NCBI GenBank assembly: GCA_977020255.1
Contig: CDROCS010000506.1
Span: forward strand, 2,356,001 to 2,420,000
DNA: 64,000 bases
Direction of reading: 5' to 3'
Source of the DNA: Obrimoposthia wandeli
Taxonomy: Eukaryota
Shown in pieces: positions 16,829-64,000 of this stretch; the stretch's first letter is position 1, and each line of letters opens with the position of its first letter. A program made the translations under genes and the position numbers. The notes under the pieces are model-generated. The model was not told the DNA's origin, made no database searches, and saw only the letters and a list, made by a program, of their open reading frames with translations.

Positions 16829-16862
16829 TCTATTCTTGAATAGATTATTGCCTTCATAAGGC

Positions 16863-16896
16863 ATTGGCTGGTGATTTTTTAATCGCCGGCCTTTTT
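16863..16896 (+). terminator. rplL-rpoB attenuator
   Basis: GGCTGGTGATT...AATCGCCGGCC followed by TTTTT. Confidence 0.8.
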
Positions 16897-17061: not shown

Positions 17062-20000
17062 ATGGTTTACTCTAATACCGAAAAAAAACGTATCCGTAAA
17101 GACTTTGGTAAAAGTGCACCAGTTGTGGCTAAACCGCAAATGTTGGCTATCCAAACTAGCTCTTTTAAAAAGTTTTTAGAAATGGATCACACAGGTGAAT
17201 ACGGCCTGGAAGCAGCATTCCGTAGCGTATTCCCGATTAAAAGTTACTCTGGAACTTCAGAACTTCAATATGTATCGTACCGTTTAGGTGAACCTGTATT
17301 TGACGTTAAAGAATGTCAAATCCGTGGTGTTACTTACTCTGCACCGCTACGTGTTAAGTTACGCCTAGTATTATACGATCGTGATGCACCTGCAGGCACT
17401 ATCAAAGATATCAAAGAACAAGAAGTTTATATGGGCGAAATCCCATTGATGACTGATACTGGTACTTTCGTTATCAATGGTACTGAACGTGTAATCGTAT
17501 CTCAGTTACACCGTAGTCCTGGTGTATTCTTCGATCACGACAAAGGTAAAACTCATTCATCAGGTAAAGTATTATATAACGCACGCGTTATTCCTTACCG
17601 TGGTTCATGGTTAGACTTTGAATTCGATCCGAAAGATAGCTTATTCGTTCGTATTGACCGTCGTCGTAAATTACCATCATCAATTATTCTTCGTGCACTT
17701 GAGTTCACGACGGAAGAAATCTTAGCAATCTTCTTTGATACTACACGTTTCGAAGTTAAAGATGGCAAGTTAATGATGGAACTACTACCAGACCGTCTAC
17801 GTGGTGAAACAGCTGTATTTGACATTGTCGCTAATGGCGAAACATATGTTGAAAATGGTCGTCGTATTACTGCTCGTCATATCAAGAAATTTGAAAAAGA
17901 CGGCGTAAACGAAATCGAAGTACCACTAGAGTATATCGCTGGTAAAGTAGCTTCTAAAGATTACATCAACGAAGACACAGGCGAAGTGATTGTTGCAGCG
18001 AATGCTGAACTAACACTAGAATCTGTTGCTGAATTGTCTCAAGCTGGTATCAAGGTAATTGATGTTCTTTATACGAACGACCTTGATGTAGGTAGTTACA
18101 TGTCTGACACATTACGTGTTGACTCAACTACTAACAAACTTGAAGCGCTAGTTGAAATCTACCGTATGATGCGTCCTGGTGAACCACCAACGCGTGAAGC
18201 GGCAGAAGGTTTATTCAATAATCTATTCTTCGCAGAAGAACGTTATGACTTATCTACTGTAGGTCGTATGAAGTTCAACCGCCGTATTGGCCGTGAAGAA
18301 GATACTGGTTCAGGTATCCTGAACAAAGCAGATATTGTTGAAGTAATGAAAACTTTGATTAATATCCGTAACGGTAAAGGCGAGGTTGATGATATCGATC
18401 ACCTTGGTAACCGTCGTATTCGTTCAGTTGGCGAAATGGCAGAAAACCAATTCCGTGTTGGTTTAGTTCGTGTAGAACGTGCTGTTCGTGAACGTCTAAG
18501 TCTTGGTGATCTTGATGCAGTAATGCCACAAGATTTAATCAATGCTAAGCCGATTTCAGCTGCGATTAAAGAGTTCTTTGGTTCATCACAACTGTCTCAG
18601 TTTATGGATCAAAATAACCCGTTGTCAGAAGTTACGCACAAACGTCGTATTTCTGCATTAGGGCCTGGTGGTCTAACACGTGAACGTGCTGGTTTTGAAG
18701 TACGTGACGTACATCCAACTCACTACGGTCGTTTATGTCCGATTGAGACTCCAGAGGGACCAAACATTGGTCTAATTAACTCACTAGCTGTATTTGCCCG
18801 TACTAACGATTATGGTTTCTTAGAAACACCATTCCGTAAAGTAATCAACGGTCAAGTAACTAATGATGTTCAATACCTTTCTGCTATCGAAGAAGGTCTG
18901 TATGCAGTAGCACAGGCTAACGCGACTGTAGATACTAATGGTGTGTTACAAGATGAATTTATCCCATGTCGTCACAAAGGTGAAACTACCTTTATGTCTG
19001 CGGATAACATTCAGTATATGGACGTATCTCCACAGCAGATTATTTCTGTGGCAGCATCGCTAATTCCATTCCTTGAACACGATGATGCTAACCGTGCATT
19101 GATGGGTGCGAATATGCAACGTCAAGCAGTACCAACACTAAATGCTGATAAGCCATTAGTAGGTACTGGTATTGAACGTGCGGTAGCAATCGATTCAGGT
19201 GTAACAGTTGTTGCGCTACGTGGCGGTTCAATCGACTATGCTGATGCAAGTCGTATCATCGTTAAAGTTAACGAAGATGAACTAGTACCAGGTGAAGCGG
19301 GTATTGATATCTACACGCTAACTAAGTACACACGTTCGAATCAAAACACATGTATTAACCAACGCCCAACAGTATTAACTGGTGAAGCAGTGGTTAAAGG
19401 CGACGTGCTTGCTGATGGTCCTTCAACGGATCTTGGTGAATTAGCACTTGGTCAAAACATGCGTATTGCATTCATGCCTTGGAATGGTTACAACTTCGAG
19501 GATTCAATCCTTGTATCAGAACGAGTTGTAAAAGAAGATCGTCTAACGACTATCCACATTCAAGAATTGTCATCGATTGCGCGTGATACTAAACTTGGTA
19601 GTGAAGAGATTACAGCTGACATCCCTAACGTGGGTGAAAGTGCATTATCTAAACTAGATGAGTCTGGTATCGTTTACGTTGGTGCTGAAGTTAAGCCGGG
19701 TGATATCCTGGTAGGTAAAGTAACCCCTAAAGGTGAAACACAATTAACGCCTGAAGAAAAGCTTCTACGAGCTATCTTCGGTGAAAAAGCATCTGATGTA
19801 AAAGACAGTTCATTACGTGTACCTAACTCTGTTTACGGTACTGTAATTGACGTGCAAGTATTTACCCGTGATGGCGTAGATAAAGATAAACGTGCACAAG
19901 ACATCGAGCAGATGCAACTGCGTGAAGCGAAAAAAGACTTAACTGAAGAATTATCTATCTTCGAAGAAAGCTTATTCGGTCGCGTTAAATCTCTATTACT

Positions 20001-21099
20001 AGCTGCAGGCAAAACGGAAGAGCAACTTAATGCTGTTTCTCGCTCGCAATGGTTAGAGATTGTTCTTTCTGATGAAGAACAACAGATTCAATTAGAAGGC
20101 TTAGCTAAGCAACATGATGAGCTACGTGCTGATTTTGATTCTAAGTTTGATATCAAACGCCGTAAAATCACTCAAGGTGATGACCTAGCACCAGGTGTAC
20201 TTAAGATTGTTAAAGTATATCTAGCTGTTAAACGTCGTATCCAACCGGGTGATAAAATGGCCGGTCGTCATGGTAACAAAGGTGTGATCTCAACAATCGT
20301 TCCTATTGAAGACATGCCGCACGATAAGTTTGGTGAGCCAGTTGATATCGTACTGAACCCGCTGGGTGTACCATCGCGTATGAACATCGGTCAGGTACTT
20401 GAAGTTCACTTGGGCCTTGCTGCTCGTGGTATCGGTAGTAAAATCGATAACATGATTAAAGAGCAACAAGATCTTGCTAAGATCCGTGAGTTCATTCAAA
20501 AAGCTTACGACATCGGTGATACGCATCAGAAAGTTGATTTATCAACATACTCTGACGAGCAGGTTCGTGTTCTTGCGCACAACTTACGTAAAGGTCTGCC
20601 AATGGCAACTCCTGCGTTTGATGGTGCAGCAGAAGCTGAAATCAAAGAAATGCTTAGATTGGCTGATTTACCAGAATCGGGTCAATTAGAGTTATTCGAT
20701 GGTCGTACTGGTGATACATTCGAACGTCCTGTAACTGTTGGTTACATGTACATGCTGAAACTGAATCACTTGGTTGATGACAAGATGCATGCGCGTTCTA
20801 CCGGTTCTTACAGCCTTGTTACTCAGCAGCCGCTGGGTGGTAAAGCTCAGTTCGGTGGTCAGCGTTTCGGTGAGATGGAAGTATGGGCTCTGGAAGCATA
20901 CGGTGCAGCATATACTCTACAAGAGATGCTAACTGTTAAGTCTGATGACGTGAACGGTCGTACTAAGATGTATAAAAACATCGTAGACGGCGATCATCGT
21001 ATGGACCCAGGTATGCCTGAATCATTCAACGTATTGTTGAAAGAGATTCGCTCATTGGGTATCAACATCGAACTAGATGAAAACAAAAACAAGAAATAA
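17062..21099 (+). CDS. rpoB: RNA polymerase beta subunit
   Basis: 1345 aa with [21 protein letters not shown] and a wild-type-looking rifampicin region ([26 protein letters not shown]). Confidence 0.99.
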
Positions 21100-21196
21100 C
21101 TCTAATTTGAGTTAATTCTGATTTTTGATTAGCACTGCGCCTCGACTCACTCTGTGAGTTGAGGCTGCTTAGTTTTCACTCCCAGTGGAGAAAAAC

Positions 21197-22000
21197 GTGA
21201 AAGACTTATTAAAGTTTCTAAAACAGCAAGGTAAATCGGAAGAATTCGATGGTATCAAGATTGGTCTAGCTTCTCCGGAACAGATCCGTTCTTGGTCTTT
21301 TGGTGAAGTTAAAAAGCCAGAAACCATTAACTACCGTACCTTCAAACCAGAACGTGACGGTTTATTCTGTGCGCGTATTTTCGGCCCAGTAAAAGATTAC
21401 GAATGTCTTTGCGGAAAATATAAGCGTCTGAAGCACCGTGGTGTTATCTGTGAAAAATGTGGCGTAGAAGTAACGCAAACTAAAGTTCGTCGTGACCGTA
21501 TGGGCCACATCGAATTAGCGTCTCCTGTTGCACACATTTGGTTCTTGAAATCATTACCATCTCGCATCGGTCTATTATTAGACATGACGCTACGTGATAT
21601 CGAACGTATTCTTTACTTCGAATCATATGTTGTTATCGAACCTGGTATGACTTCGCTAGAGCGTGGCATGATGCTGACTGAAGAGCAGTATCTTGACAAC
21701 CTAGAAGAATGGGGTGATGAATTTGACGCGAAGATGGGTGCAGAAGCTGTACTTTCTTTGTTACAAGATCTTAACCTAAACCAAGACATCGAAGAAATGC
21801 GTGAAGAATTAGAGACTACAAACTCTGAAACTAAACGTAAGAAGATCACTAAACGTCTTAAATTAATGGAAGCATTCGCTATATCTGGTAACAAACCAGA
21901 GTGGATGATCATGAACGTTCTACCGGTATTACCGCCAGATCTTCGTCCATTAGTACCACTAGATGGTGGCCGTTTTGCGACTTCAGATCTAAATGACCTT

Positions 22001-22032
<32 letters not shown>

Positions 22033-25000
22033 AAAACGTCTATTAGACTTAGCTGCACCAGATATTATCGTACGTAACGAAAAACGTATGTTACAAGAAT
22101 CTGTTGATGCGCTATTAGATAATGGTCGTCGTGGTCGTGCGATTACTGGTTCTAACAAACGTCCTCTTAAATCTCTTGCTGATATGATCAAGGGTAAACA
22201 AGGTCGTTTCCGTCAGAATCTACTTGGTAAACGTGTGGATTACTCTGGTCGTTCTGTAATTACAGTTGGACCAACGTTACGCTTACACCAATGTGGTCTA
22301 CCTAAGAAAATGGCACTTGAGCTATTCAAGCCATTCATCTACGGTAAATTAGAATCACGTGGTTTTGCTACAACGATTAAAGCAGCTAAGAAAATGGTTG
22401 AACGTGAAGGCGCTGAAGTTTGGGATATCCTAGACGGCGTGATTCGTGAACATCCAGTAATGCTTAACCGTGCACCAACTCTGCATAGACTTGGTATTCA
22501 AGCATTCGAACCTGTTCTAATTGAAGGTAAAGCAATTCAGCTACACCCTCTAGTATGTTCTGCATACAACGCCGATTTCGATGGCGATCAGATGGCTGTA
22601 CACGTACCGTTAACAATTGAAGCTCAATTGGAAGCGCGTACACTGATGATGTCTACGAATAACATCCTTTCACCTGCAAATGGTGAACCGGTTATCGTAC
22701 CTTCTCAAGATGTTGTATTAGGTCTTTACTACATGACTCGTTCTGGCATTGCTGCCAAGGGTGAAGGCATGGTATTAGGCAGCCCTGAAGAAGCTGAAAA
22801 GCTATATCGCAGTGGCCATGCTGAACTACATGCACGTGTTAAAGTTCGTATTACAGAACATCTTAAAGATGAAGAAACTGGTGAAGTTACAGTTCGCACT
22901 GAACTGAAGAACACAACAGTAGGTCGTGCGATTCTTTATTTAGTAGCCCCTACAGGTCTGCCATATGAACTAATCGATCCGTCTAAAACTTTATCTGCTG
23001 AAGAAGAAGCTAAACTTGCAGAGAATCCAGCTAACTGGATCCTGAAAGTATCTAACGAAGCGTTAGGTAAAAAGCAAATTTCTAAGCTACTAAATGACTG
23101 TTACCGTCTATTAGGTCTGAAAGATACTGTTGTATTCGCCGATCAACTAATGTACACCGGTTTCCATTACGCTGCCCTTTCTGGTGCATCTGTTGGTATC
23201 GATGACATGGTTATTCCTGCAGCGAAGAAAACCTTAATCGCAGAAGCTGAAGTTGAAGTAACTCAAATCCAAGAGCAATTCCAATCTGGTCTTGTTACTG
23301 CGGGTGAGCGTTACAATAAAGTTATTGATATTTGGGCTCGTGCGAATGAGCTAATCTCAAAAGCGATGATGGATAACTTGTCTTCAGAAACTAAACTTAA
23401 CTCGTTAGGTGATTCTGAGACACAGAAATCATTCAACAGCATCTTTATGATGGCCGATTCTGGTGCACGTGGTAGTGCGGCACAGATTCGTCAGCTAGCT
23501 GGTATGCGTGGTCTGATGGCGAAACCAGATGGTTCGATCATTGAAACACCTATTACGGCTAACTTCCGTGAAGGTCTAAACGTACTTCAGTACTTCATCT
23601 CAACGCATGGTGCACGTAAAGGTCTAGCCGATACAGCACTTAAAACAGCAAACTCGGGTTACCTAACTCGTCGTCTTGTTGACGTTGCACAAGATCTTGT
23701 AATTAACGAGATTGATTGTGGTACTGAAAATGGTCTAATCATCACACCTCATATTGAAGGTGGCGATGTTGTTGAACCGTTACGTGATCGTGTTCTAGGT
23801 CGTGTTGTTGCTGAAGATGTACTAAACCCAGTAACGGGTGAAGTAATTCTTCCACGTAACACGCTACTAGACGAAAAACTTTGTGACTTCTTAGAAGAAC
23901 ACTCAGTGGATCAAATGAAAGTTCGCTCTGTAATTACTTGTGACAATGACTTCGGTGTTTGTGCAGCTTGTTATGGTCGTGATTTAGCACGTGGCGTTAT
24001 GGTTGGCCAAGGCGAGGCAGTTGGTGTTGTTGCAGCACAATCAATTGGTGAACCTGGTACACAGTTAACGATGCGTACATTCCACATTGGTGGTGCGGCA
24101 TCGAGAGCATCTGCAGAAAATAATATCCAAGTGAAAAACACGGGTACTATTAAGTTCCACAACGAGAAATTCGTTGAGAACGCAGACGGCAAACTGGTTA
24201 TTACTTCACGTTCATCAGAAATCACGATTATTGATGAAAACGGTCGTACTAAAGAAAGTCATAAACTGCCTTATGGTGCGATTGTTGAGTTCAAAGACAA
24301 CGCTGCTATTGAAGCTGGTAGCATCATCGCTAACTGGGACCCGCATACTCACCCAATCATCACTGAGGTGGCTGGACAAATTAAGTTTGTTGACTTAATT
24401 GAAGGTATTACGGTTACTAGACAAACTGATGATCTAACAGGTCTATCTAGCACAGTAATTCTTGATCCTGCTACACGTGTTGCAGCTGGTAAAGATATGC
24501 GTCCTATGGTTAAACTTGTAGATGCAGCTGGTAATGATTTATTCATTCCTGGTACAGAAGTTGTTGCACAATACTTCTTACCATCGAATGCAATCGTTAA
24601 CCTAGAAGATGGCGCATTAGTAACTGTTGGTGAAGCGTTAGCGCGTATTCCTCAAGAAAGCTCGAAAACACGTGATATTACGGGTGGTCTACCACGCGTA
24701 GCGGATCTGTTTGAAGCGCGTCAGCCAAAAGATGCTGCTATCTTAGCGGAAATCTCAGGTACTATTAGTTTCGGTAAAGAAACTAAAGGTAAACGTCGTC
24801 TAGTTATCACACCTACTGATGGTGCTGAAGCTTACGAAGAGATGATCCCTAAATGGCGTCACTTGAACGTGTTTGAAGGTGAGAAAGTTCTTAAAGGTGA
24901 AGTTATCGCCGATGGTCCTGAATCAGCACACGATATCTTACGTCTACGTGGTATTAGCCATGTTGCGAACTATATCGCAAACGAAGTTCAAGAAGTATAC

Positions 25001-25480
25001 CGTCTGCAAGGCGTTAAGATTAACGATAAACACATTGAAACTATCGTTCGTCAAATGCTACGTAAAGCTAACGTTGTATCTTCTGGTGACAGTCACTTCT
25101 TACAAGGTGAACAAGCTGAAGTTTCACGTCTGAAAATTGCTAACCGTCAGTTAATCGCTGAAGGCAAGCAACCAGCCGTGTTCCAGCATATCCTTATGGG
25201 TATTACTAAAGCTTCTCTTGCAACTGAGTCATTTATCTCAGCTGCATCTTTCCAAGAAACAACACGTGTTCTAACGGACGCTGCTGTACATGGTAAGATT
25301 GATGACCTTCGTGGTCTGAAAGAGAACGTTATTGTTGGTCGTCTGATCCCTGCAGGTACTGGTTTCTCTTACCACCAAGAACGCGCGAAAATGCGTGCTG
25401 GTAAGGTAAAAGAAGCTATGCCAGAGATCACTACTGATGAAGCTGAACAGAACCTAGCTAACCTATTAAATAACCTTTAA
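21197..25480 (+). CDS. rpoC: RNA polymerase beta' subunit
   Basis: NADFDGD catalytic motif and Zn-ribbon cysteines. GTG start at 21197 with a GGAG RBS. Confidence 0.99.
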
Positions 25481-25591: not shown

Positions 25592-25628
25592 GCTTGTTTT
25601 TTAACGCCATAGCAGTCTATACTCTTGC

Positions 25629-25717
25629 CTCTTGTCGGAGTGCTTTAGGGCTGAGACCATTTAAATATGGGATCCGTGGAACCTGATCAGGGTAATACCT
25701 GCGTAAGGAAACAAGAG
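25629..25717 (+). ncRNA. TPP riboswitch
   Basis: GGAGTGC...GCTGAGA...GATCC...ACCTGATCAGGGTAATACCTGCGTAAGGA with P1 CTCTTGT/ACAAGAG, upstream of thiC. Confidence 0.95.
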
Positions 25718-25784
25718 TGATTAATACAATAATGTGAGTGTAATACTAGGTTTGCCCGAGGGAATGTAAGGCGGCTTTGTATAA

Positions 25785-27923
<2,139 letters not shown>

Positions 27924-49979: not shown

Positions 49980-51331
49980 TTAGCGCATGGTAACAAACTC
50001 TTCCGAGCCTGTTGGATGGATAGCGACAACACTATCGAAATCAGCTTTTGTTGCGCCCATTTTCATCGCGACACCAAAACCTTGGATCATTTCGTCTACA
50101 GCAAAACCAATACCGTGTAGACCTACAACCGTTTCATTTTCACCAGCGCAAACTAGTTTCATTTTACAAGGTTGGCGGTTTGAAGTGATTGCAGTGTACA
50201 TAGCGGTAAAACCTGATTGGTATACTTTTACGTTTTCTTCACCATATTGTGCAATCGCTTCTGGTTCTGTTAAACCGATTGTACCAATTGGCGGGTGGCT
50301 AAACACAACTGTTGGGATTAGTGTGTAATCCATTTTCGCCGTTGTTTTACCGTTAAACAGACGTTCTGATAATTGACGACCCGCTTTAACTGCAACAGGT
50401 GTTAGTTCAACGCCGCCTTCCATGATGTCACCAACACAGTAGATACCATCAACATTGGTATTTTGGTATTCGTCGACTTTGATGTAACCACGATCATTGG
50501 TTTCAACGCCAGTCGCTGCAAGATTAATCTTGTCGGTAGAAGGGTGACGACCAATAGCCCAGATTAGCGTATCAACATTTTGTGATTCACCGTTCTCAAG
50601 GTGCAGCGTGATAGAGCCATCAGCTTCTTTTACTACTTCTTTTGGTACTGAGTTGGTGTGTAATGTAGGACCTTCGGTATTCATTACATCAACAAGCGTT
50701 TCAATGACCATAGGATCAAAGCTACGTAGTGGTGATTCTTTACGAACAAATGTGTTTCAGTGCCTAGACCGTGTAATACACCCGCTAATTCAACGGCAAT
50801 GTAACCGGCACCGATAACAGCAACGCGTTTTGGTTGTGTTGTTAATTCAAAGAAACCATTTGAATCAATACCGTGTTCAGCACCAGGTACATTCGGAATT
50901 GTTGGTGCGCCGCCAGTCGCGATTAGGATATGATCGGCCGTGTATGTTTCGCCGTTTACTTTGACTGTATTTTTGTCTTCAAAAGTCGCGAAACCTTTGA
51001 TCACAGTTACCTTGTTATTACCAAGTACATTGTCATAAGAAGTATGAATACGGCTAATATAGGCTTCACGTGCCGCGACTAGTTTACCCCAATCAAGGCC
51101 TTTATTTTCTACATCAAAGCCATAGTCTTTTGCATAAAGGTGCATTGCTTCTGCGATTTGAGCACCGTGCCACATTACTTTTTTCGGTACGCAACCAACA
51201 TTCACACAAGTACCACCTAGCGCATTCGCTTCGATGATGGCAACTTTTTTACCGTACATTGAGGCTCTGTTTGCAGATGCAATACCGCCGCTACCACCAC
51301 CAATGGCAATATAATCAAAATGCTGTGACAT
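49980..51331 (-). pseudogene. gor: Glutathione-disulfide reductase, frameshifted near 50750
   Basis: The N-half has GGGSGG and CVNVGC; the C-half has HPTGSEEFV. The halves are in different frames, and the expected [16 protein letters not shown] is split at about 50748-50751. Confidence 0.85.
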
Positions 51332-51526
51332 ATTCATAGTCCTTAATTGAGAAGATGAGCTTATTATATGACTAAGTTCATGCTGTTGTTTTGTAATAAA
51401 GCTAATTACACAGTTTAAACTGAATTGAGAGATATTATTAGTAGGTAAAGCCATTCACGGTCATTACTTTTACCTATCAATGCTAAATCTGATGCGCCCG
51501 ACACGTGTCGATATTTACTCGCTATA

Positions 51527-53842: not shown

Positions 53843-56827
53843 ATGGTTAATACTCTTACGCTTAGTGATATAAACATTGATACGACACAATTGTTGGACG
53901 CTCACTCTCTCGATCTGTTTTTAACTAATCTAGCCAGTTTGCTACGTATTGATACCATTTATGTTGCGACTGTTTGCCCTCAAACTTTTGACTTATCTAT
54001 TTTATCTTGCTTACAACAAGGTGTTTTTGACGCTGATGTTGTTATCGATTTTAAATCCATGCCTTGCTTTGCTGCTTATCATCACGGTTATGCGGAATAT
54101 GAACAAGATCTAGCCTCTCGATTTCCTCAACAAGCGCAATTACAAACATGGCAAGCTGAAGCTTATTTAGGTATTCGTCTCAATGATTCATGCGGAAAAC
54201 CAATTGGTATATTATCTGCATTTTTCCCTCGTAAACTGTCTCAACATAAACTTGAATTAAACTTAATTCGTTTGGTTGCAGGCTTTTTAGAAAAAGAGAT
54301 CCAGCCTAAACAAACGACTACCTTATCTGTTGCTACTATAACGCCGGATATACCTGCAGGGTTGAGTGCGTATACAATGTGGTTGGAAGATAATATAGCT
54401 AAAGGTCGACTAAGTAGTTGGAGCTATTTTTTAGATCAAGATAGATTAGAATGTTCAGACTCAGCGGCGAATATTATTGAAACCACGAACGTCAAAGAAA
54501 TTAATCAACTTGATGCCTTGTTAGCCCTCGTTGATAAAACCGATAAGCATAAGGTATTACGTGATTTTCAATCTGCAATTGTATCTAATTCCACAGCGTC
54601 GGTCCGTAGTGTCTTTAATATTACGACGTTAGAAGGTAATGAAAAACGAATTCAAAGTGATATTTATCCTATCGTTGATGAAACTGGTAAAGTATATCGT
54701 CTAGATTGCATCAGTAAGGATATGACAGCAGAAGAATTAACGAGAAAAAGAGCATCCGCACAAGAGCGTATTCTTGAAACTGTTTTAGCCACCACGCCTG
54801 TGGGGTTAGTTAAACTGAATGCTAATCGTGAAATTGAGTGGGTGAATAAACAGGCATGTAAAATGTTTGGTTATGAATTGGAAGATTTTCATCGCTTACG
54901 TGAACAGGGCAAATTAAATACTAGCAGCCTGAACTTATATTTCGATGACGATAAAGAGCTGTTTGAAGAATACTATCAAGACATATACGCCAACAAACGC
55001 AACAATTTTACGCTTAATGCACGTTACCGTCACCGTGATGGTAGCATCTTGTGGACTAAGTTAACGGTGACTGCGGTTAGAGATGGTATTAATAAAATTC
55101 AATATTTCATTAATACCATTCAAGATCTCACCGAAGAACAAGATAATAGACAGCGTCTGTCCATTATTGAAAGTATGTACAGACACAGTGCTGAGGGGAT
55201 CATGTTATGCGATGCCAATCAGAAGATTATCGATGTTAATCCAGCATTTGAAACTATCACAGGTTATAGCGCCGAAGATGCAATAGGGCGTACACATGAT
55301 TTATTACGCTCTGGTGTCCATGATGAACAATTCTATAAAGATATGTCCGAGGCATTGTTAAAAGATAATGAATGGAAAGGTATTATCTGGAGTCGTGATC
55401 GTGACGGCGATATATTTGCTCAGCAAGTCACGCTGTCGAGTATTAAAGAGCGCGGTAAACTTAAATATTTCTTTGCGGTCTTCAGTGATGTGACTGAAGA
55501 AAAGAAAACAGAACAACAAATTATCACTCAATCTAATTTTGATCGTTTAACGGGTTTACCTAATCGCCAATACTTTAGTGCTGAAGTGCGCCAAGTTATC
55601 GACAAGTCAGCGACGAATGGTCAGAAGTTTGCGATTCTCTACATTGATATTGATGATTTTAAATCGGTAAATAACTCCGAAGATTTTATGGCGGGAGATC
55701 GTCTTTTAATCGAAACGACGGAACGTTTAAAATACCGTAGTCGAGATAATGACTTTTTGGCTAGAATTGATGGTGATGAATTTGCATTTATCATTCCTGA
55801 AGTGGTCAATAAGCGGCAAGCAGAAGTATACGCAAAACAGTTACAAGGTGTGTTTGCACAAGCTTATAAATTGTCTAATCAACAGCGCTATGTCACAGCA
55901 TCAGTGGGTATTACCATGTATCCAGAAGATGGCGTATCAGTTGAAGCATTAATGCAAAGCGCAGAACAAGCTGTATTTGAAGCAAAGAGAAACGGGCGTA
56001 ATCAATGCGTTACGTTTACACAAGACTTAAGTGATGCAGCAATCCTTAAACATCAAACTGTTGTCGAATTAGCGGAAGCAATAAAACGCGGTAGCTTAGA
56101 TGTGTACTATCAACCTATTGTTGATAATATCACGGGTAAAGTGGACAAATTAGAAGCGCTAGTTCGTTGGCATCATCAGGAACGAGGTTTTATTTCACCT
56201 GCCGAATTTATCCCGCTAGCAGAAGAAGGTGGGCTGATTCAAGGCCTGGGTGAGTATGTATTAGATCAAGCATGCTGTGACCTGAAAATATTACATGAAG
56301 CTGGTTTCCCTTATATAGAAATGAGTATTAACCGTTCCAGCCTAGAGTTTAAGACTGTCGATATGCAAGCATCAGAATGGTTAAAAGTGATCGCTTCGCA
56401 TAATCTACCTTATGCATCGCTAACAATGGAGATAACGGAAAGTTTGTTGATGGATATGGATGGTCAGTACATGCAGCGTATTAATGCGTTAAAACAAGCA
56501 GGTGTTAAAATCGCTATCGATGATTTTGGAACCGGTTATTCGTCATTAAACTATTTACGTAGTTTGCCTGCCGATATCGTTAAAATTGATCGTAGTTTTA
56601 TTATTAACATTCCAGATAACCAACAAGATAACTTATTACTGGACGGTATTATTACGATCGTCCATAACTTGGGGATGAAAGTTGTCACCGAAGGTGTTGA
56701 AACGCAGGCTCAATTGAGCTATTTACAAGAGAAAAAGTGCGATTATACACAAGGTTTCTTATTATGCCGTCCTATACCACTGCATGCGCTATTAGAGTTT
56801 ATCACTCAAAATGAAAGCGTTTTTTAA
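53843..56827 (+). CDS. GAF/PAS-GGDEF-EAL c-di-GMP signalling protein (likely phosphodiesterase)
   Basis: Several PAS domains, a GGDEF variant DGDEF, and intact EAL, DDFGTGYSSL and EGVET. Confidence 0.88.
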   Translation: MVNTLTLSDINIDTTQLLDAHSLDLFLTNLASLLRIDTIYVATVCPQTFDLSILSCLQQGVFDADVVIDFKSMPCFAAYHHGYAEYEQDLASRFPQQAQLQTWQAEAYLGIRLNDSCGKPIGILSAFFPRKLSQHKLELNLIRLVAGFLEKEIQPKQTTTLSVATITPDIPAGLSAYTMWLEDNIAKGRLSSWSYFLDQDRLECSDSAANIIETTNVKEINQLDALLALVDKTDKHKVLRDFQSAIVSNSTASVRSVFNITTLEGNEKRIQSDIYPIVDETGKVYRLDCISKDMTAEELTRKRASAQERILETVLATTPVGLVKLNANREIEWVNKQACKMFGYELEDFHRLREQGKLNTSSLNLYFDDDKELFEEYYQDIYANKRNNFTLNARYRHRDGSILWTKLTVTAVRDGINKIQYFINTIQDLTEEQDNRQRLSIIESMYRHSAEGIMLCDANQKIIDVNPAFETITGYSAEDAIGRTHDLLRSGVHDEQFYKDMSEALLKDNEWKGIIWSRDRDGDIFAQQVTLSSIKERGKLKYFFAVFSDVTEEKKTEQQIITQSNFDRLTGLPNRQYFSAEVRQVIDKSATNGQKFAILYIDIDDFKSVNNSEDFMAGDRLLIETTERLKYRSRDNDFLARIDGDEFAFIIPEVVNKRQAEVYAKQLQGVFAQAYKLSNQQRYVTASVGITMYPEDGVSVEALMQSAEQAVFEAKRNGRNQCVTFTQDLSDAAILKHQTVVELAEAIKRGSLDVYYQPIVDNITGKVDKLEALVRWHHQERGFISPAEFIPLAEEGGLIQGLGEYVLDQACCDLKILHEAGFPYIEMSINRSSLEFKTVDMQASEWLKVIASHNLPYASLTMEITESLLMDMDGQYMQRINALKQAGVKIAIDDFGTGYSSLNYLRSLPADIVKIDRSFIINIPDNQQDNLLLDGIITIVHNLGMKVVTEGVETQAQLSYLQEKKCDYTQGFLLCRPIPLHALLEFITQNESVF

Positions 56828-56938
56828 ATAACATCGCTATCTTCATTTAATCATCAACTGAATTTAGGTGGTATTCGTATTTTTTGCTAATATAGGCATT
56901 CGAACGCGAATAATTAAACCTAACCTTATCAGGCCACC

Positions 56939-57703
56939 ATGAACAGCATACAAATAATCACAACAGATATACTATTTTCTGATCACATTGCAGCACTTGC
57001 TAAACAATGGGGATTCTCTCTTGAGCCTGTGGCTGATGCTCAATTTCAATTGCTATACTCTGATAAGGGACTTGAGCTATTTAAGCTTGATGAACCAAAA
57101 TTAGGTGCTGTATATGTTGATTTTGCGGGTGGTGCAGTCAATCATCGTCGTAAATTCGGGGGAGGTAAAGGACAAGCGATTGCTAAAGCTGTCGGTTTAA
57201 AATCAGGTGTGACACCGTCTGTATTGGATGGTACCGCCGGCTTAGGTCGTGATGCTTTTGTATTGGCATCTTTAGGTTGCAACGTCACCATGTTGGAACG
57301 CTCACCAATTGTAGCTGCGTTACTTGAAGATGGTCTGAAGCGCGCAGAACAAGATGAAGAGATTGGCAGTTGGATTGGTACACGATTAAAATTAGTATTT
57401 GCATCGAGCCTATCAGAGCTAGAAGTGTTAGGTATATCACCAGATGTGGTGTATCTCGACCCTATGTATCCACACAAGAAGAAATCGGCGCTCGTGAAGA
57501 AAGAAATGCGGGTATTCCAATCATTAGTTGGCGCAGATTTAGATGCCGATGGCTTGTTTGAACCGGCAATGCGTGTCGCGACTAAGCGTGTCGTCGTTAA
57601 ACGTCCTGATTATGCTGAATATATTGCTAATGCAGAACCGAGCATGGCCATTGAAACAAAGAAAAATCGTTTTGATGTTTATGTCAAACAGGCAATGAAG
57701 TAA
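56939..57703 (+). CDS. rsmJ: 16S rRNA m2G1516 methyltransferase
   Basis: [24 protein letters not shown] and RVVVKRP. Confidence 0.93.
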
Positions 57704-57846
57704 CTAATTCGGCCTGTAGGATAGTCATTAATATCGAGTAGATATTTTATTTTAATATAATATATGGAATGGGGCTCAAGGTTTTTGATGTTTAGCTGTG
57801 CTAACTTTGCGACCCAAATGGGCCTAACTATAGACGAGGGATAGTT

Positions 57847-58557
57847 GTGCTACTTGAATTAGATAATATTGAGAATGAATTGACGAGTTCATATGCGTTT
57901 ACAGACGAAGATCACCGACTTTTAAGATCTTATGATGGTGTTATCGAAGGTATTGCTACTTTATTCGGTAAGCAATGTGAAGTGATTTTACACTCATTAG
58001 AAAGTATAGACCGTTCCGTCATTAAGATTGAAAATGGTTTTAATACGGGTCGTGTTGAAGGATCACCAATTACCGATTTAGCACTTAAGATGCTGCAAGA
58101 TATATCGGCGCAAAATAAGCAATGTTCAAAAGCGTACTTTACGCAGACTAAAGATGGTCAAATGATGCGTTCGATGACGATCGCAATCAAAAACCGTTCA
58201 GAAAGAACAATTGGTTTAATTTGTATTAACATTAATATTGGTGCATCGTTTATTGATTTTGTACAGGAGCTTTTACCGACTCCCGAAGCAAGAGAAACTG
58301 AATTATCTTCTGAGAACTTTGCAACCACAGTTGAAGAGTTAGTAGACCGTTCTGTAGAAGAAACAATTACTGATATTAACAACCGTACTGATATTGCCAA
58401 TAATGCTAAAAATAAGCACATTGTTATATCATTACACCAACAAGGTATTTTTGATATTAAAGACGCGATCAATATGGTGGCTGATAAACTGAATATTTCA
58501 AAACATACTGTGTACTTATATATACGCCAAATTAAATCTGATGAAGCAGAGCTGTAA
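57847..58557 (+). CDS. YheO-like PAS/HTH transcriptional regulator
   Basis: CEVILHSL, GSPITDLAL, GLICININ, GIFDIKDA and SKHTVYLY. Confidence 0.88.
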   Translation: MLLELDNIENELTSSYAFTDEDHRLLRSYDGVIEGIATLFGKQCEVILHSLESIDRSVIKIENGFNTGRVEGSPITDLALKMLQDISAQNKQCSKAYFTQTKDGQMMRSMTIAIKNRSERTIGLICININIGASFIDFVQELLPTPEARETELSSENFATTVEELVDRSVEETITDINNRTDIANNAKNKHIVISLHQQGIFDIKDAINMVADKLNISKHTVYLYIRQIKSDEAEL

Positions 58558-58598
58558 TAAGCTGTTTGTATCAATAATATTAAAGCGCTAAGTATAAT

Positions 58599-58632
58599 AA
58601 GGTGATTATTGTATGAATAATCACCTTTCCTT
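58599..58632 (+). terminator. Hairpin downstream of the yheO-like gene
   Basis: AAGGTGATTATT...AATAATCACCTT followed by T/C residues. Confidence 0.65.
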
Positions 58633-58724
58633 CCAGTTCAATTTAGTTTTTCTACACTTAACGTGCTTTATCTGCATGGTTATCATACAGACTGGCTGCT
58701 TTGGATAAATGTGTAACATAAAAC

Positions 58725-58758
58725 TTGCCAAGTAAGTCAATATCTCTATAATGCGACC
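58725..58758 (+). promoter_or_regulatory. rrn P1 promoter
   Basis: TTGCCA-16 bp-TATAAT with a GCGACC discriminator. Confidence 0.85.
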
Positions 58759-58849
58759 TCACTGACACGGCAACAGCCGCTAAGTAAAGGTGTTTATCAG
58801 TATCGAAAGTTACTTTTTAAACCTCCTGAAATAAAGTGCAAATATGTGC

Positions 58850-58884
58850 TTGACTTCAAAATTGGTTTGCGTATAATACGCAGC
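58850..58884 (+). promoter_or_regulatory. rrn P2 promoter
   Basis: TTGACT-16 bp-TATAAT, about 125 bp downstream of P1. Confidence 0.85.
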
Positions 58885-58914
58885 CTGACTACGACGAAAG
58901 ACGTCAAGGTCAAC

Positions 58915-58925
58915 GCTCTTTAACA
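58915..58925 (+). promoter_or_regulatory. rrn leader boxA antiterminator
   Basis: GCTCTTTAACA. Confidence 0.85.
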
Positions 58926-59120
58926 ATTTATTCAAGCAATCTGTGTGAGCACTTGCAGAGATATAATGACCAAATATTATATCAATGCAATTGTGAACAT
59001 TAAATTAAATCGAAAGATTTGGTTTTATAAACAACAAGCTTCGGTTTGTTGTTGAAGTACAGAATTCATTGAGCCGACTTAATCTAATCTACTTGTAGAT
59101 TGGGTTAGTCAAAAAACTTT

Positions 59121-59408
59121 TAATTGAAGAGTTTGATCATGGCTCAGATTGAACGCTGGCGGTAGGCTTAACACATGCAAGTCGAGCGGAAACGAAGAAT
59201 AGCTTGCTATTCTGGCGTCGAGCGGCGGACGGGTGAGTAATGCTTGGGAATCTGCCTAGTCGAGGGGGACAACAGTTGGAAACGACTGCTAATACCGCAT
59301 ACGACCTACGGGTGAAAGGGGGCCTCTTCTTGAAAGCTCCCGCGACTAGATGAGCCCAAGTGGGATTAGCTTGTTGGTGAGGTAAGAGCTCACCAAGGCG
59401 ACGATCCC

Positions 59409-59491
<83 letters not shown>

Positions 59492-59619
59492 CACAATGGG
59501 CGAAAGCCTGATGCAGCCATACCGCGTGTATGAAGAAGGCCTTAGGGTTGTAAAGTACTTTCAGCGAGGAGGAAAGGTTAACGATTAATACTCGTTAGCT
59601 GTGACGTTACTCGCAGAAG

Positions 59620-59675
<56 letters not shown>

Positions 59676-59898
59676 ATCGGAATTACTGGGCGTAAAGCGC
59701 ATGCAGGCGGTTTGTTAAGCGAGATGTGAAAGCCCCGGGCTCAACCTGGGAACTGCATTTCGAACTGGCAAACTAGAGTTCTTGAGAGGGTGGTAGAATT
59801 TCAGGTGTAGCGGTGAAATGCGTAGAGATCTGAAGGAATACCAGTGGCGAAGGCGGCCACCTGGCAAGTAACTGACGCTCAGATGCGAAAGCGTGGGT

Positions 59899-59932
<34 letters not shown>

Positions 59933-60038
59933 CGTAAACGATGTCTACTCGGAGTTTGGTTCCTTGCGAACTGGGCTCTTAAGCTAACGCATTAAGTAGA
60001 CCGCCTGGGGAGTACGGCCGCAAGGTTAAAACTCAAAT

Positions 60039-60109
<71 letters not shown>

Positions 60110-60165
60110 CTCTTGACATCCACAGAATCTGGTAGAGATACCTCAGTGCCTTCGGGAACTGTGAG

Positions 60166-60197
<32 letters not shown>

Positions 60198-60203
60198 TGT
60201 GAA

Positions 60204-60239
<36 letters not shown>

Positions 60240-60279
60240 TCCTTATTTGCCAGCACGTAATGGTGGGAACTCTAAGGAG

Positions 60280-60332
<53 letters not shown>

Positions 60333-60490
60333 CTTACGAGTAGGGCTACACACGTGCTACAATGGCGCATACAAAGGGCTGCAAACCAGCGATGGTAAGC
60401 GAATCCCATAAAGTGCGTCGTAGTCCGGATTGGGGTCTGCAACTCGACCCCATGAAGTCGGAATCGCTAGTAATCGTGAATCAGAATGTC

Positions 60491-60544
<54 letters not shown>

Positions 60545-60665
60545 GGCTGCACCAGAAGTCATTAGCTTAACCTTCGGGAGGGCGATGACCACGGTGTGGT
60601 TCATGACTGGGGTGAAGTCGTAACAAGGTAGCCCTAGGGGAACCTGGGGCTGGATCACCTCCTTA
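59121..60665 (+). rRNA. rrs: 16S rRNA (Moritella-like)
   Basis: GAGTTTGATCATGGCTCAG, GTGCCAGCAGCCGCGGTAA and the anti-SD GATCACCTCCTTA. Ends approximate. Confidence 0.98.
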
Positions 60666-60955: not shown

Positions 60956-62836
60956 GGTTAAGTGACTAAGCGTATACGGTGGATGCCTAGGCAGTCAGAG
61001 GCGATGAAGGACGTGTTAATCTGCGTTAAGCTGTGGGGAGTTGATAAAAAGCGTTAATCCACAGATTTCCGAATGGGGAAACCCACCTTACTAAGTAAGG
61101 TATCGTAACGTGAATACATAGCGTTACGAAGCGAACCGGGAGAACTGAAACATCTAAGTACCCCGAGGAAAAGAAATCAATAGAGATACCCTTAGTAGCG
61201 GCGAGCGAACGGGGTCTAGCCCTTAAGCAGTTTGGAAGTTAATGGAAGATTCTGGAAAGTTTCACGATACAGGGTGATAGTCCCGTACATGAAAACGACC
61301 TTACTGTGAAATCGAGTAGGACGGCACACGTGATATGCTGTTTGAATATGGGAGGACCATCTTCCAAGGCTAAATACTACTGACTGACCGATAGTGAACC
61401 AGTACCGTGAGGGAAAGGCGAAAAGAACCCCTGTGAGGGGAGTGAAATAGAACCTGAAACCGTATACGTACAAGCAGTGGGAGCCTACTTTGTTGGGTGA
61501 CTGCGTACCTTTTGTATAATGGGTCAACGACTTAATTTCAGTAGCAAGGTTAAGCGAATAGCGGAGCCGTAGGGAAACCGAGTGTTAACTGCGCGAATAG
61601 TTGCTGGGATTAGACCCGAAACCCGGTGATCTAGCCATGGGCAGGTTGAAGGTTGAGTAACATCAACTGGAGGAATAGAACCGACTAATGTTGAAAAATT
61701 AGCGGATGACTTGTGGCTGGGGGTGAAAGGCCAATCAAACCGGGAGATAGCTGGTTCTCCTCGAAAGCTATTTAGGTAGCGCCTCGCGTCTAACTATTGG
61801 GGGTAGAGCACTGTTAAGGCTAGGGGGTCATCCCGACTTACCAACCCTTTGCAAACTCCGAATACCAATAAGTTCAATCGCGGGAGACACACGGCGGGTG
61901 CTAACGTCCGTCGTGGAAAGGGAAACAACCCAGACCGTCAGCTAAGGTCCCAAAGTGTATGTTAAGTGGGAAACGATGTGGAAAGGCTCAGACAGCCAGG
62001 AAGTTGGCTTAGAAGCAGCCATCTTTTAAAGAAAGCGTAATAGCTCACTGGTCGAGTCGGTCTGCGCGGAAGATTTAACGGGGCTAAACATACCACCGAA
62101 GCTACGGATGCAAGACTTGTTCTTGCATGGTAGAGAGCGTTCTGTAAGCCGTTGAAGGTGAGTTGAGAAGCTTGCTGGAGGTATCAGAAGTGCGAATGTT
62201 GACATGAGTAACGATAATGGGGGTGAAAAACCTCCACGCCGAAAGACCAAGGGTTCCTGTCCAACGTTAATCGGGGCAGGGTGAGTCGACTCTAAGGCGA
62301 GGCCGAAAGGCGTAGTCGATGGGAAACTGGTTAATATTCCAGTACTCGCTTATATTGCGATGGGGTGACGGAGAAGGTTAGGCTAGCATGGCGATGGTTG
62401 TCCATGTTTAAGGTAGTAGGCAAGTGACTTAGGCAAATCCGGGTCGCTCTCTTTAATGAGAATGCTGAGAACTGATGACGAGTCTCTACGGAGATGAAGT
62501 AGTTGATACCCGGCTTCCAGGAAAAACCTCTAAGCTTCAGATATGAGAGAATCGTACCCCAAACCGACACAGGTGGTTAGGTAGAGAATACTAAGGCGCT
62601 TGAGAGAACTCGGGTGAAGGAACTAGGCAAAATGGTACCGTAACTTCGGGAGAAGGTACGCCAATGATGGTGAAGGACTTGCTCCGTAAGCTATTGTTGG
62701 TCGCAGAGAAATGGTGGCTGCAACTGTTTATTAAAAACACAGCACTGTGCAAAATCGAAAGATGACGTATACGGTGTGACGCCTGCCCGGTGCCGGAAGG
62801 TTAATTGATTGGGTTAGACTTAGGTCGAAGCTCATG

Positions 62837-62934
<98 letters not shown>

Positions 62935-63192
62935 GGCCACGCTGTCTCCACCCGAGACTCAGTGAAATTGAAATCGCTGTTAAGATGCAGTGTACCCGCG
63001 GCTAGACGGAAAGACCCCGTGAACCTTTACTATAGCTTGGCACTGAACATTGAACCTACATGTGTAGGATAGGTGGGAGACTGTGAAACATTGTCGCTAG
63101 ATGATGTGGAGTCTACCTTGAAATACCACCCTTGTACGTTTGATGTTCTAACGTAGGCCCCTTATCGGGGTTGCGGACAGTGTCTGGTGGGT

Positions 63193-63235
<43 letters not shown>

Positions 63236-63437
63236 ACGAAGGTTGGCTAAACATGGTTGGACATCATGTGGTTAGTGCAAAGGCATAAGCCAGGCTAACT
63301 GTGAGACCTACAAGTCGAGCAGATACGAAAGTAGGCCTTAGTGATCCGGTGGTAGAAAGTGGAATTGCCATCGCTCAACGGATAAAAGGTACCTTAGGGA
63401 TAACAGGCTGATCGCGCCCAAGAGTTCATATCGACGG

Positions 63438-63484
<47 letters not shown>

Positions 63485-63486
63485 TT

Positions 63487-63519
<33 letters not shown>

Positions 63520-63688
63520 TGGTACGCGAGCTGGGTTTAGAACGTCGTGAGACAGTTCGGTCCCTATCTGCCGTGGGCGTTTGAGAATTGAAAGGAGCTG
63601 CTCCTAGTACGAGAGGACCGGAGTGGACGAACCACTGGTGTTCGGGTTGTTATGCCAATAGCATTGCCCGGTAGCTAAGTTCGGAACT

Positions 63689-63719
<31 letters not shown>

Positions 63720-63856
63720 AGGCCTCGAGATGAGTTCTCACTGGAGCTTTAAGCTCCCTAAAGGGCCGTTGGAGACTACAACGTTGATAGGCAAGGTGTG
63801 TAAGTGCTGTGAGGCATTGAGCTAACTTGTACTAATTACCCGTGAGGCTTAACCAT
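60956..63856 (+). rRNA. rrl: 23S rRNA
   Basis: GGTTAAG 5' end, sarcin-ricin loop AGTACGAGAGGAC, and CTTAACC 3' end. It contains an atypical domain V patch. Confidence 0.97.
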
Positions 63857-63990
63857 ACAAATTAAAGTATGATTAATTGAATATCGACTTAAGAATTGAT
63901 TGAACGCTTTATGTTTTAAAGACTTCTTTATTTATAGCTTTTCAGATTAACAATAGGAACGAAAGTTTCTTATAGAAAGCAAACCAGATT

Positions 63991-64000
63991 TGCTTGGTGA
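63991..64000 (+). rRNA. rrf: Probable 5' start of 5S rRNA (truncated by the window edge)
   Basis: TGCTTGGTGA at the expected position after 23S; only 10 nt are visible. Confidence 0.4.

What the first reader, a model, noticed from the sequence alone, without database searches (positions are those of the whole stretch)
63293..63470. Foreign-looking patch of about 180 nt across the peptidyl-transferase region of the 23S rRNA
Seen in sequence, compared with E. coli/Vibrio 23S from memory: flanks are gammaproteobacterial, but this stretch has GGTAGAAAGTGGAATTGCC (gamma GGTTCTG.ATGGAAGGGCC), GTACCTTAGGG (gamma GTACTCCGGGG), GATCGCGCCC...GGCGCGGTT (gamma GATACCGCCC...GGCGGTGTT) and GCTCGTCGC (gamma GCTCATCAC). 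Helices wholly inside the patch are compensated (CGCGCC 63413-18 with GGCGCG 63436-41; TGGTAG with TTGCCA), so this is a real rRNA sequence rather than noise. Helices with one strand outside are not. The helix-74 5' strand CCCCG (63015-19) faces TTAGGG (63394-99), giving a C-A mismatch next to the A2451 equivalent (63403). Two helix-90 A-U pairs become G-U, and a G-G clash appears near 63294. Inference: a segment from a distant phylum (the GAAAGTGGAAT signature reminds me of PVC-group 23S) was either recombined into this operon or stitched in by the assembler from contaminant reads. If real, it is an inter-phylum mosaic of the ribosome's catalytic centre, which could affect sensitivity to PTC antibiotics.
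Basis: partly seen in the sequence, partly recalled or inferred. Interest (0 to 1): 0.8.

Follow-up and report, generated by a model that had tools for sequence, protein, structure and literature searches.

The report
Foreign patch in 23S: assembly chimera
About 200 bases in the catalytic region of this marine bacterium's 23S rRNA gene are letter-for-letter those of an unrelated Rubritalea (Verrucomicrobiota), but the sample's own sequencing data and related bacteria carry the normal sequence there, so the patch is most likely an assembly error, not a hybrid ribosome.

Summary
Window 63274-63481 (208 nt; at least 63294-63468) of the 23S gene (60956-63856, +) is 100% identical to the 23S of a Rubritalea sp. 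MAG (PVC group). The flanks are gammaproteobacterial: about 98.3% identical to Moritella-like metagenome contigs and only 70-73% to Rubritalea. All 35 diagnostic sites inside the patch side with Rubritalea.

It is probably not biology. In Logan contigs of the two runs from the sample that best holds this window, the contig crossing the left part of the patch has the normal gamma letters and carries 98% of the summed depth there. It has the same depth class as contigs that match the rest of this 23S exactly. Patch-type letters appear only on a 28x contig whose left flank is not Moritella. At 63354-63359 no contig carries them. Two independent samples and all three metagenome contigs with the same left flank are also canonical.

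Eight base pairs cross the patch border and differ between the two parents. In the mosaic, four are mismatches and four are G-U; none is compensated.

Verdict: in-silico chimera from a mixed animal-plus-bacteria sample, about 0.85. A real single-operon gene conversion is not excluded, about 0.08. The scan noted this same stretch once before (s1-198737). It also noted similar unchecked patches in other rRNA copies of this assembly.

The parts
60956..63856 (+). 23S rRNA gene that carries the patch. It belongs to an rrn operon whose 16S lies at 59121-60665.
   Evidence: cmscan RF02541, 2768 bits, full length
63274..63481 (+). Maximal foreign tract: 208 nt, 100% identical to Rubritalea sp. MAG 23S. 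E. coli numbering about 2322-2529. It covers H86, H87, H88, H89, the 3' strand of H74, the central-loop nucleotides of the peptidyl-transferase centre, the 5' strand of H90 and the start of H91.
   Evidence: helix positions from the cmscan structure line
63294..63468 (+). Minimal foreign tract: from the first to the last position that differs from canonical Moritella-like 23S (about 25 differences).
   Evidence: alignment with L005-L007; other letters in the runs
63274..63293 (+). Left junction zone: 20 nt identical in canonical Moritella-like 23S and in Rubritalea. The switch lies somewhere within it.
63469..63481 (+). Right junction zone: 13 nt identical in both parents.
63016..63027 (+). 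Native 5' strand of helix 74, facing the foreign 3' strand 63386-63398. It gives C.A (63018/63396), A.C (63022/63393) and two G-U pairs.
63236..63247 (+). Native 5' strands of the helices closed by 63335-36 and 63289-94. They give A.C (63236/63336) and G.G (63242/63294).
63519..63534 (+). Native 3' strand of helix 90, facing the foreign 5' strand 63459-63469. Two pairs (63465/63523, 63468/63520) are reduced to G-U.

Best explanation
The patch is an in-silico chimera. The genome was assembled from a mixed sample: an animal host plus an abundant Moritella-like gammaproteobacterium plus minor bacteria. During contig building or consensus, the sequence between two universally conserved anchors of 23S domain V was taken from reads of a co-occurring Rubritalea-like verrucomicrobium. 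The anchors are 63274-63293 and 63469-63481. The bacterium's own reads should have been used.

Shown here:
- The patch is identical to Rubritalea 23S.
- The sample's dominant 23S is canonical across the left half of the patch.
- Relatives are canonical.
- The border-crossing pairs are broken.

Inferred:
- No real DNA molecule carries the junctions.
- The step of the pipeline that made the chimera is unknown. A consensus built anchor to anchor would fit the size (see full report), but the assembler is unknown to me.
For: 1. Donor identity. 208 of 208 nt match the Rubritalea MAG, against 70-73% identity in the flanks. The 77-mer is found in no other species representative.

2. The sample's own data (runs X1 and X9; X1 is the best holder of the unique flank).
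- A contig of depth 1746 spans 63185-63392. It carries the canonical letters at the 14 patch positions listed between 63294 and 63359.
- Its loose end continues TCCGGGG, which is canonical.
- Contigs that match the rest of this 23S with 0 differences have depths of 1009-1403, the same depth class.
- Window-type letters have depth 28.3 of 1774.7 (1.6%). They sit on a contig with 18 other letters in 161 aligned bases, including 63258 left of the patch (at most 8 of the 18 could lie inside the patch), so a non-Moritella left flank.
- At 63354-63359, no contig of X1 or X9 carries the window's letters.

3. Independent Moritella-holding samples X2 (food) and X8 (ice) are canonical. The three metagenome contigs with the same left flank are also canonical. 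L006 and L007 are 98.3% identical to the window left of the patch and 87.5-88% inside it.

4. No sign of selection. All 8 border-crossing pairs at which the parents differ are Watson-Crick in both parents. In the mosaic, 4 are mismatches and 4 are G-U. Over the same model span, the covariance-model score is 562.8 bits, against 598.5 for the canonical relative.

5. Context (unchecked notes). The same assembly holds animal sequences. It also has other rRNA copies flagged with Fusobacteriaceae-like, Bacillota-like and other patches of about 200-700 nt.
Against: - The read evidence is Logan contigs, not raw reads. Contigs drop rare variants. A patch in one of roughly ten rrn copies could have been removed from them. 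Absence of the junction is therefore not proof.
- The contig appears to run through the whole rrn operon into further sequence, which suggests a long-read assembly. In such assemblies a 200-nt foreign insert is harder to explain.
- In X1 the foreign-type sequence is about 60 times rarer than the native one. A simple majority consensus should not have chosen it.
- The exact donor species was not detected among the best holders of the Rubritalea MAG's own DNA. The MAG comes from another host and study.
- The 28x contig stops matching the window at 63353, so it may not be the exact donor.
Confidence: 0.85

Rival explanations
1. Real, very recent gene conversion. One rrn operon of this strain took up about 175-208 nt of Rubritalea-like 23S DNA by homologous recombination anchored in the short identical tracts. 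The other operons remain canonical.
For: - The junctions lie in tracts of identity of 20 and 13 nt, as recombination also requires.
- Helices inside the patch are intact, and the universally conserved PTC nucleotides are unchanged. The rRNA might therefore still fold.
- Logan contigs cannot exclude a variant present in 1 of N copies (by the tool's own caveat).
- Mosaic 16S genes within genera have been reported (PMC5688380, abstract only).
Against: - No contig in either run of the sample joins the Moritella flank to patch letters.
- Patch-type depth is 1.6% of the total, below what one operon in about ten would give, and it is linked to a foreign flank.
- Four mismatches and four weakened pairs, with no compensation.
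- Not seen in any related population.
- A 13-nt anchor is short for RecA-type recombination (general knowledge).
- Several other rRNA copies of the same assembly are flagged with patches from other phyla. A common technical cause explains that far better than repeated inter-phylum transfers.
Confidence: 0.08
2. The chimeric molecule was made in the library (template switching during amplification between Moritella and Rubritalea-like rRNA fragments) and was then taken into the consensus.
For: It has the same signature as above: switches inside conserved tracts in a mixed sample.
Against: Such molecules are rare and should lose against native depth of about 1700x. A double switch within 208 nt is needed. 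No junction-bearing contig is seen.
Confidence: 0.04
3. The patch is the native sequence of this lineage: a trait of the strain or genus in all operons.
For: None beyond the assembly itself.
Against: The dominant contigs of the sample itself are canonical, and so are X2, X8, L005, L006 and L007.
Confidence: 0.01

Closest known systems
Chimeric rRNA sequences produced by assembling mixed or metagenomic data (discussed for SSU rRNA in the phyloFlash paper, PMC7593591)
   Same: A segment of another organism's rRNA is joined at conserved tracts. The sample is mixed. There are no compensating changes.
   Different: Here it is an internal 208-nt island inside an otherwise correct, full-length 23S on a long contig. 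It is not an end-to-end join of two partial genes. The assembler step responsible is not identified.
Natural mosaic rRNA genes from horizontal transfer or gene conversion (for example 16S in Enterobacter, PMC5688380, abstract only)
   Same: A patchwork gene with a foreign tract bounded by identical sequence.
   Different: The cited example concerns transfer within a single genus (Enterobacter). Here the donor is in another phylum and the tract is 100% identical to the donor. It breaks four pairs, and the sample's contigs do not support it.
Intragenomic 23S heterogeneity (Pei et al. 2009, PMC2672173: mean 0.40%, maximum 4.04% among 184 species)
   Same: If real, the copy would differ from its sister copies by about 0.9% overall, which is inside the reported range.
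   Different: The roughly 25 differences are all packed into 175 nt of the most conserved domain. They reproduce another phylum's sequence exactly.

Membership tests
In-silico assembly chimera | The segment is identical or near-identical to another organism's homologous sequence, while the flanks belong to the host organism. | tested here: met
   208/208 nt identical to Rubritalea against 70-73% in the flanks. Flanks are 98.3% identical to Moritella-like contigs.
In-silico assembly chimera | The breakpoints fall in tracts identical in both parents. | tested here: met
   20-nt and 13-nt shared tracts at 63274-63293 and 63469-63481
In-silico assembly chimera | The sample's reads support the parental (canonical) sequence and not the junctions. 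| tested here: inconclusive
   The canonical contig holds 98.4% of depth in X1 and all of it in X9. No junction-bearing contig is seen. These are contigs that drop rare variants, not raw reads.
In-silico assembly chimera | The donor organism is present in the same sample. | tested here: inconclusive
   X1 holds a 28x non-Moritella 23S contig with patch-type letters at 63294-63336. The runs of this sample are not among the listed holders of the Rubritalea MAG's own DNA.
Natural rRNA mosaic by recombination | The junctions are present in real DNA molecules at about single-copy depth. | tested here: inconclusive
   Not seen in the Logan contigs of X1 and X9. Raw spanning reads were not available.
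Natural rRNA mosaic by recombination | The mosaic is shared by related strains or populations. | tested here: not met
   X2, X8, L005, L006 and L007 are all canonical.
Natural rRNA mosaic by recombination | The secondary structure is kept, so the rRNA is functional. | tested here: not met
   4 mismatches and 4 G-U among the 8 border-crossing covarying pairs. The score is 36 bits below the canonical relative.

The most novel reading that the evidence does not exclude
One rrn operon of a psychrophilic marine gammaproteobacterium really carries a freshly acquired 175-208-nt tract of verrucomicrobial 23S across the peptidyl-transferase centre. It would be an inter-phylum mosaic of the ribosome's catalytic core, caught before any compensatory change.
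Probability: 0.08. Interest if true: 0.8.

Novelty: not a real feature. Interest (0 to 1): 0.12.

Why it matters
As an artefact it matters for data hygiene. This 23S copy would mislead chimera-sensitive uses such as LSU phylogeny, probe or primer design, and inference of rRNA-based drug resistance. Other rRNA copies of this assembly are also flagged, though those notes are unchecked.

It also gives a recognisable signature for finding such errors elsewhere:
- an island of about 200 nt
- 100% identity to another phylum
- bounded by short universal tracts
- every border-crossing covarying pair broken or weakened

If the patch were real, it would be a rare natural test of how modular the catalytic core of the ribosome is.

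Tried and rejected
- Genus or strain trait: rejected.
- Other foreign islands in the operon: none found against Rubritalea. The next-longest exact matches are 67 and 42 nt, which are ordinary conserved tracts.
- A cluster of 25 differences from L006/L007 at 62400-62499 is native. A 1009x contig of X1 matches the window there with 0 differences.
- Same-sample origin of the Rubritalea MAG: not supported. The MAG's best holders are another organism and study.
- Identifying the organism by exact protein look-ups failed. Four proteins of the window are not in the collections.
- Effect on antibiotic-binding nucleotides: none changed.
- Covariance-model score: the mosaic scores below the canonical relative, but not below Rubritalea's own segment (562.8 against 598.5 and 562.6). 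The score alone does not separate the hypotheses.
- Assembly quality: seven flanking genes tested with family models (murB, birA, thiC, thiE, glpX, aroH, prlC) are full length. Only gor is split. There is no sign of a generally error-rich assembly.

Full report
**What is there**

The window ends in an rrn operon: 16S at 59121-60665 and 23S at 60956-63856, both on the + strand. I aligned the 3' part of the 23S with two references: an E. coli 23S (L001) and the 23S of a Rubritalea sp. MAG.

The MAG was found because a 77-nt piece of the patch occurs exactly there, in all three of its rrn copies. It occurs in no other of the 185,579 species-representative genomes. Rubritalea belongs to the Verrucomicrobiota, PVC group.

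The alignment shows a sharp island:
- Positions 63274-63481 (208 nt) are 100% identical to Rubritalea.
- The next-longest exact match between the whole window and that operon is 67 nt.
- All 35 sites inside the island at which E. coli and Rubritalea differ side with Rubritalea. Outside it, 23 of 231 do.
- Identity to Rubritalea is 70.6% to the left of the island and 73.4% to the right.

Only the extent needs adjusting: minimal 63294-63468, maximal 63274-63481.

**What the native sequence should be**

I scanned the metagenome collection with the 49-nt left flank, which is Moritella-type. This returned three contigs, L005-L007.
- L006 and L007 are 98.3% identical to the window across 23S left of the patch, but only 87.5-88% identical inside it.
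- All three carry the ordinary gammaproteobacterial letters at every diagnostic position.
- The patch is therefore not a lineage trait.

Using these relatives, the switch points lie within two tracts shared by both parents. The left one is 20 nt (63274-63293) and the right one is 13 nt (63469-63481).

**What the sample's own data say**

The unique flank 54000-59000 is best held by run X1. Run X9 is from the same sample, and its organism label is coded. I laid the Logan contigs of X1, X9 and two independent samples (X2 food, X8 ice) on 61500-64000.

- Along most of the 23S, X1 contigs of depth 1009-1403 match the window with 0 differences. These are the bacterium's own rRNA.
- Across 63185-63392, the contig of the same depth class (1746) carries canonical gamma letters at the 14 patch positions listed between 63294 and 63359. 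Its loose end continues with the canonical TCCGGGG.
- Contigs aligned from 63397 onward are preceded by the canonical GTACTCCG.
- Window-type letters account for 28.3 of 1774.7 depth units (1.6%).
- Those letters lie on a 533-nt contig with 18 other letters in its 161 aligned bases, including 63258 left of the patch. At most 8 of the 18 could lie inside the patch. That is a foreign 23S, not a Moritella flank.
- At 63354-63359, no contig of X1 or X9 carries the window's letters.
- X2 and X8 are canonical as well.

There is one caveat. These are contigs, which drop rare variants. A patch in one of roughly ten operons is therefore not strictly excluded.

**Structure**

I used the Rfam LSU consensus structure and a three-way comparison.

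- Helices lying wholly inside the patch (H86, H87, H88, H89) are perfectly paired, as expected for a genuine rRNA segment.
- Eight pairs cross the patch border and differ between the two parents. All eight are Watson-Crick in both parents.

| Pair (window positions) | In the mosaic |
|---|---|
| 63018 / 63396 | C.A mismatch |
| 63022 / 63393 | A.C mismatch |
| 63236 / 63336 | A.C mismatch |
| 63242 / 63294 | G.G mismatch |
| 63019 / 63395 | G-U |
| 63021 / 63394 | G-U |
| 63465 / 63523 | G-U |
| 63468 / 63520 | G-U |

- Over the same model span, the mosaic scores 562.8 bits. The canonical relative L007 scores 598.5 and Rubritalea scores 562.6.
- Nothing suggests that selection has acted on the junctions.
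- The nucleotides that contact PTC antibiotics are unchanged. These are E. coli 2447-2453 and 2499-2506, with E. coli number = window minus 60952. The suggested change in drug sensitivity has no direct basis.

**Context**

Earlier notes of this scan are unchecked AI notes. They describe the same "genome" as holding 18S/28S fragments, retroelements and Moritella operons. That makes it an animal assembly with bacterial contigs.

They also list other rRNA copies with foreign patches:
- a Fusobacteriaceae-like core of about 710 nt in one 16S copy
- a patch of about 207 nt in another 16S copy
- Bacillota-type patches in the PTC region of another 23S copy

If these hold, a shared technical cause is far more economical than repeated inter-phylum transfers into one genome.

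**Mechanism**

The sequence between two universal anchors was most likely filled from the wrong organism's reads. I cannot name the step, because the assembler is unknown to me.

One untested lead comes from the metaMDBG paper (PMC11392814). That assembler uses 13-nt minimizers at density 0.005, about 200 nt apart. It takes base sequence for each minimizer interval from a read that holds the same minimizers. Three things fit this: an island of about 200 nt, a 13-nt right anchor, and the sizes of the other flagged patches.

Two points argue against it. Its polishing step should normally restore the majority sequence. I also have no evidence that this assembler was used.

A real gene conversion would leave the same junction signature, so the junctions themselves do not discriminate between the hypotheses.

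**Comparison with what is known**

- Chimeric rRNA from the assembly of mixed data is a recognised problem (PMC7593591).
- Natural mosaic rRNA genes are reported within the genus Enterobacter (PMC5688380, abstract only).
- Intragenomic 23S divergence reaches at most 4.04% among 184 species (PMC2672173).
- Neither of those two papers' abstracts describes a patch between phyla, exactly identical to the donor and structurally uncompensated, in the PTC region. I read only the abstracts and did not search the literature for such a case.

**Verdict**

- Observation: confirmed.
- Interpretation: the foreign origin is right.
- Most likely cause: an assembly chimera, confidence 0.85.
- Real single-operon mosaic: about 0.08.
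- Interest is low unless raw spanning reads prove the junctions.

Noticed in passing
window 49980-51454 (-): The glutathione-disulfide reductase gene (gor) is split into two overlapping ORFs. The N-terminal part is 50684-51454 (profile positions 1-202 of 450). The C-terminal part is 49980-50711 (positions 209-450). The reading frame shifts by one base around 50,730-50,745. This is either a pseudogene or a residual indel error of the assembly.
   Followed up: partly
other pieces of the same assembly (notes s1-224232, s1-204663, s1-208608): First-stage notes list further foreign-looking patches in other 16S and 23S copies: Fusobacteriaceae-like at about 710 nt, about 207 nt, and Bacillota-type at about 250 nt. 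They should be tested together with this one, since a common technical origin is likely.
   Followed up: no
window 62400-62499: There is a cluster of 25 differences from the Moritella-like metagenome contigs L006 and L007 in a variable 23S region. Unlike the patch, the window's letters here are backed by a full-depth (1009x) contig of the sample with 0 differences, so this is native strain variation.
   Followed up: yes
Read laying record 7 of run X1, aligned to window 63193-63353: A 533-nt, 28x contig carries patch-type letters at 63294-63336 but has a non-Moritella left flank. It stops matching the window at 63353. It may come from a second verrucomicrobium-like organism, or it may itself be a k-mer-graph chimera. 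I could not tell which.
   Followed up: partly
window 16836-16892 (+) and 25626-25727 (+): There is a P26 sRNA-family match just upstream of the 1345-aa and 1431-aa ORFs at 17062-25480 (rpoB- and rpoC-sized, not tested). There is also a TPP riboswitch upstream of thiC (25857-27923). Both are ordinary for gammaproteobacteria.
   Followed up: no
L002-L004 (OZ253479.1): The Rubritalea sp. MAG, a 2.10-Mb chromosome, has at least three rrn operons that are identical in 16S and 23S scores and carry tRNA genes in the spacer. Its best-holding runs come from a different host organism and study than the window's sample.
   Followed up: partly
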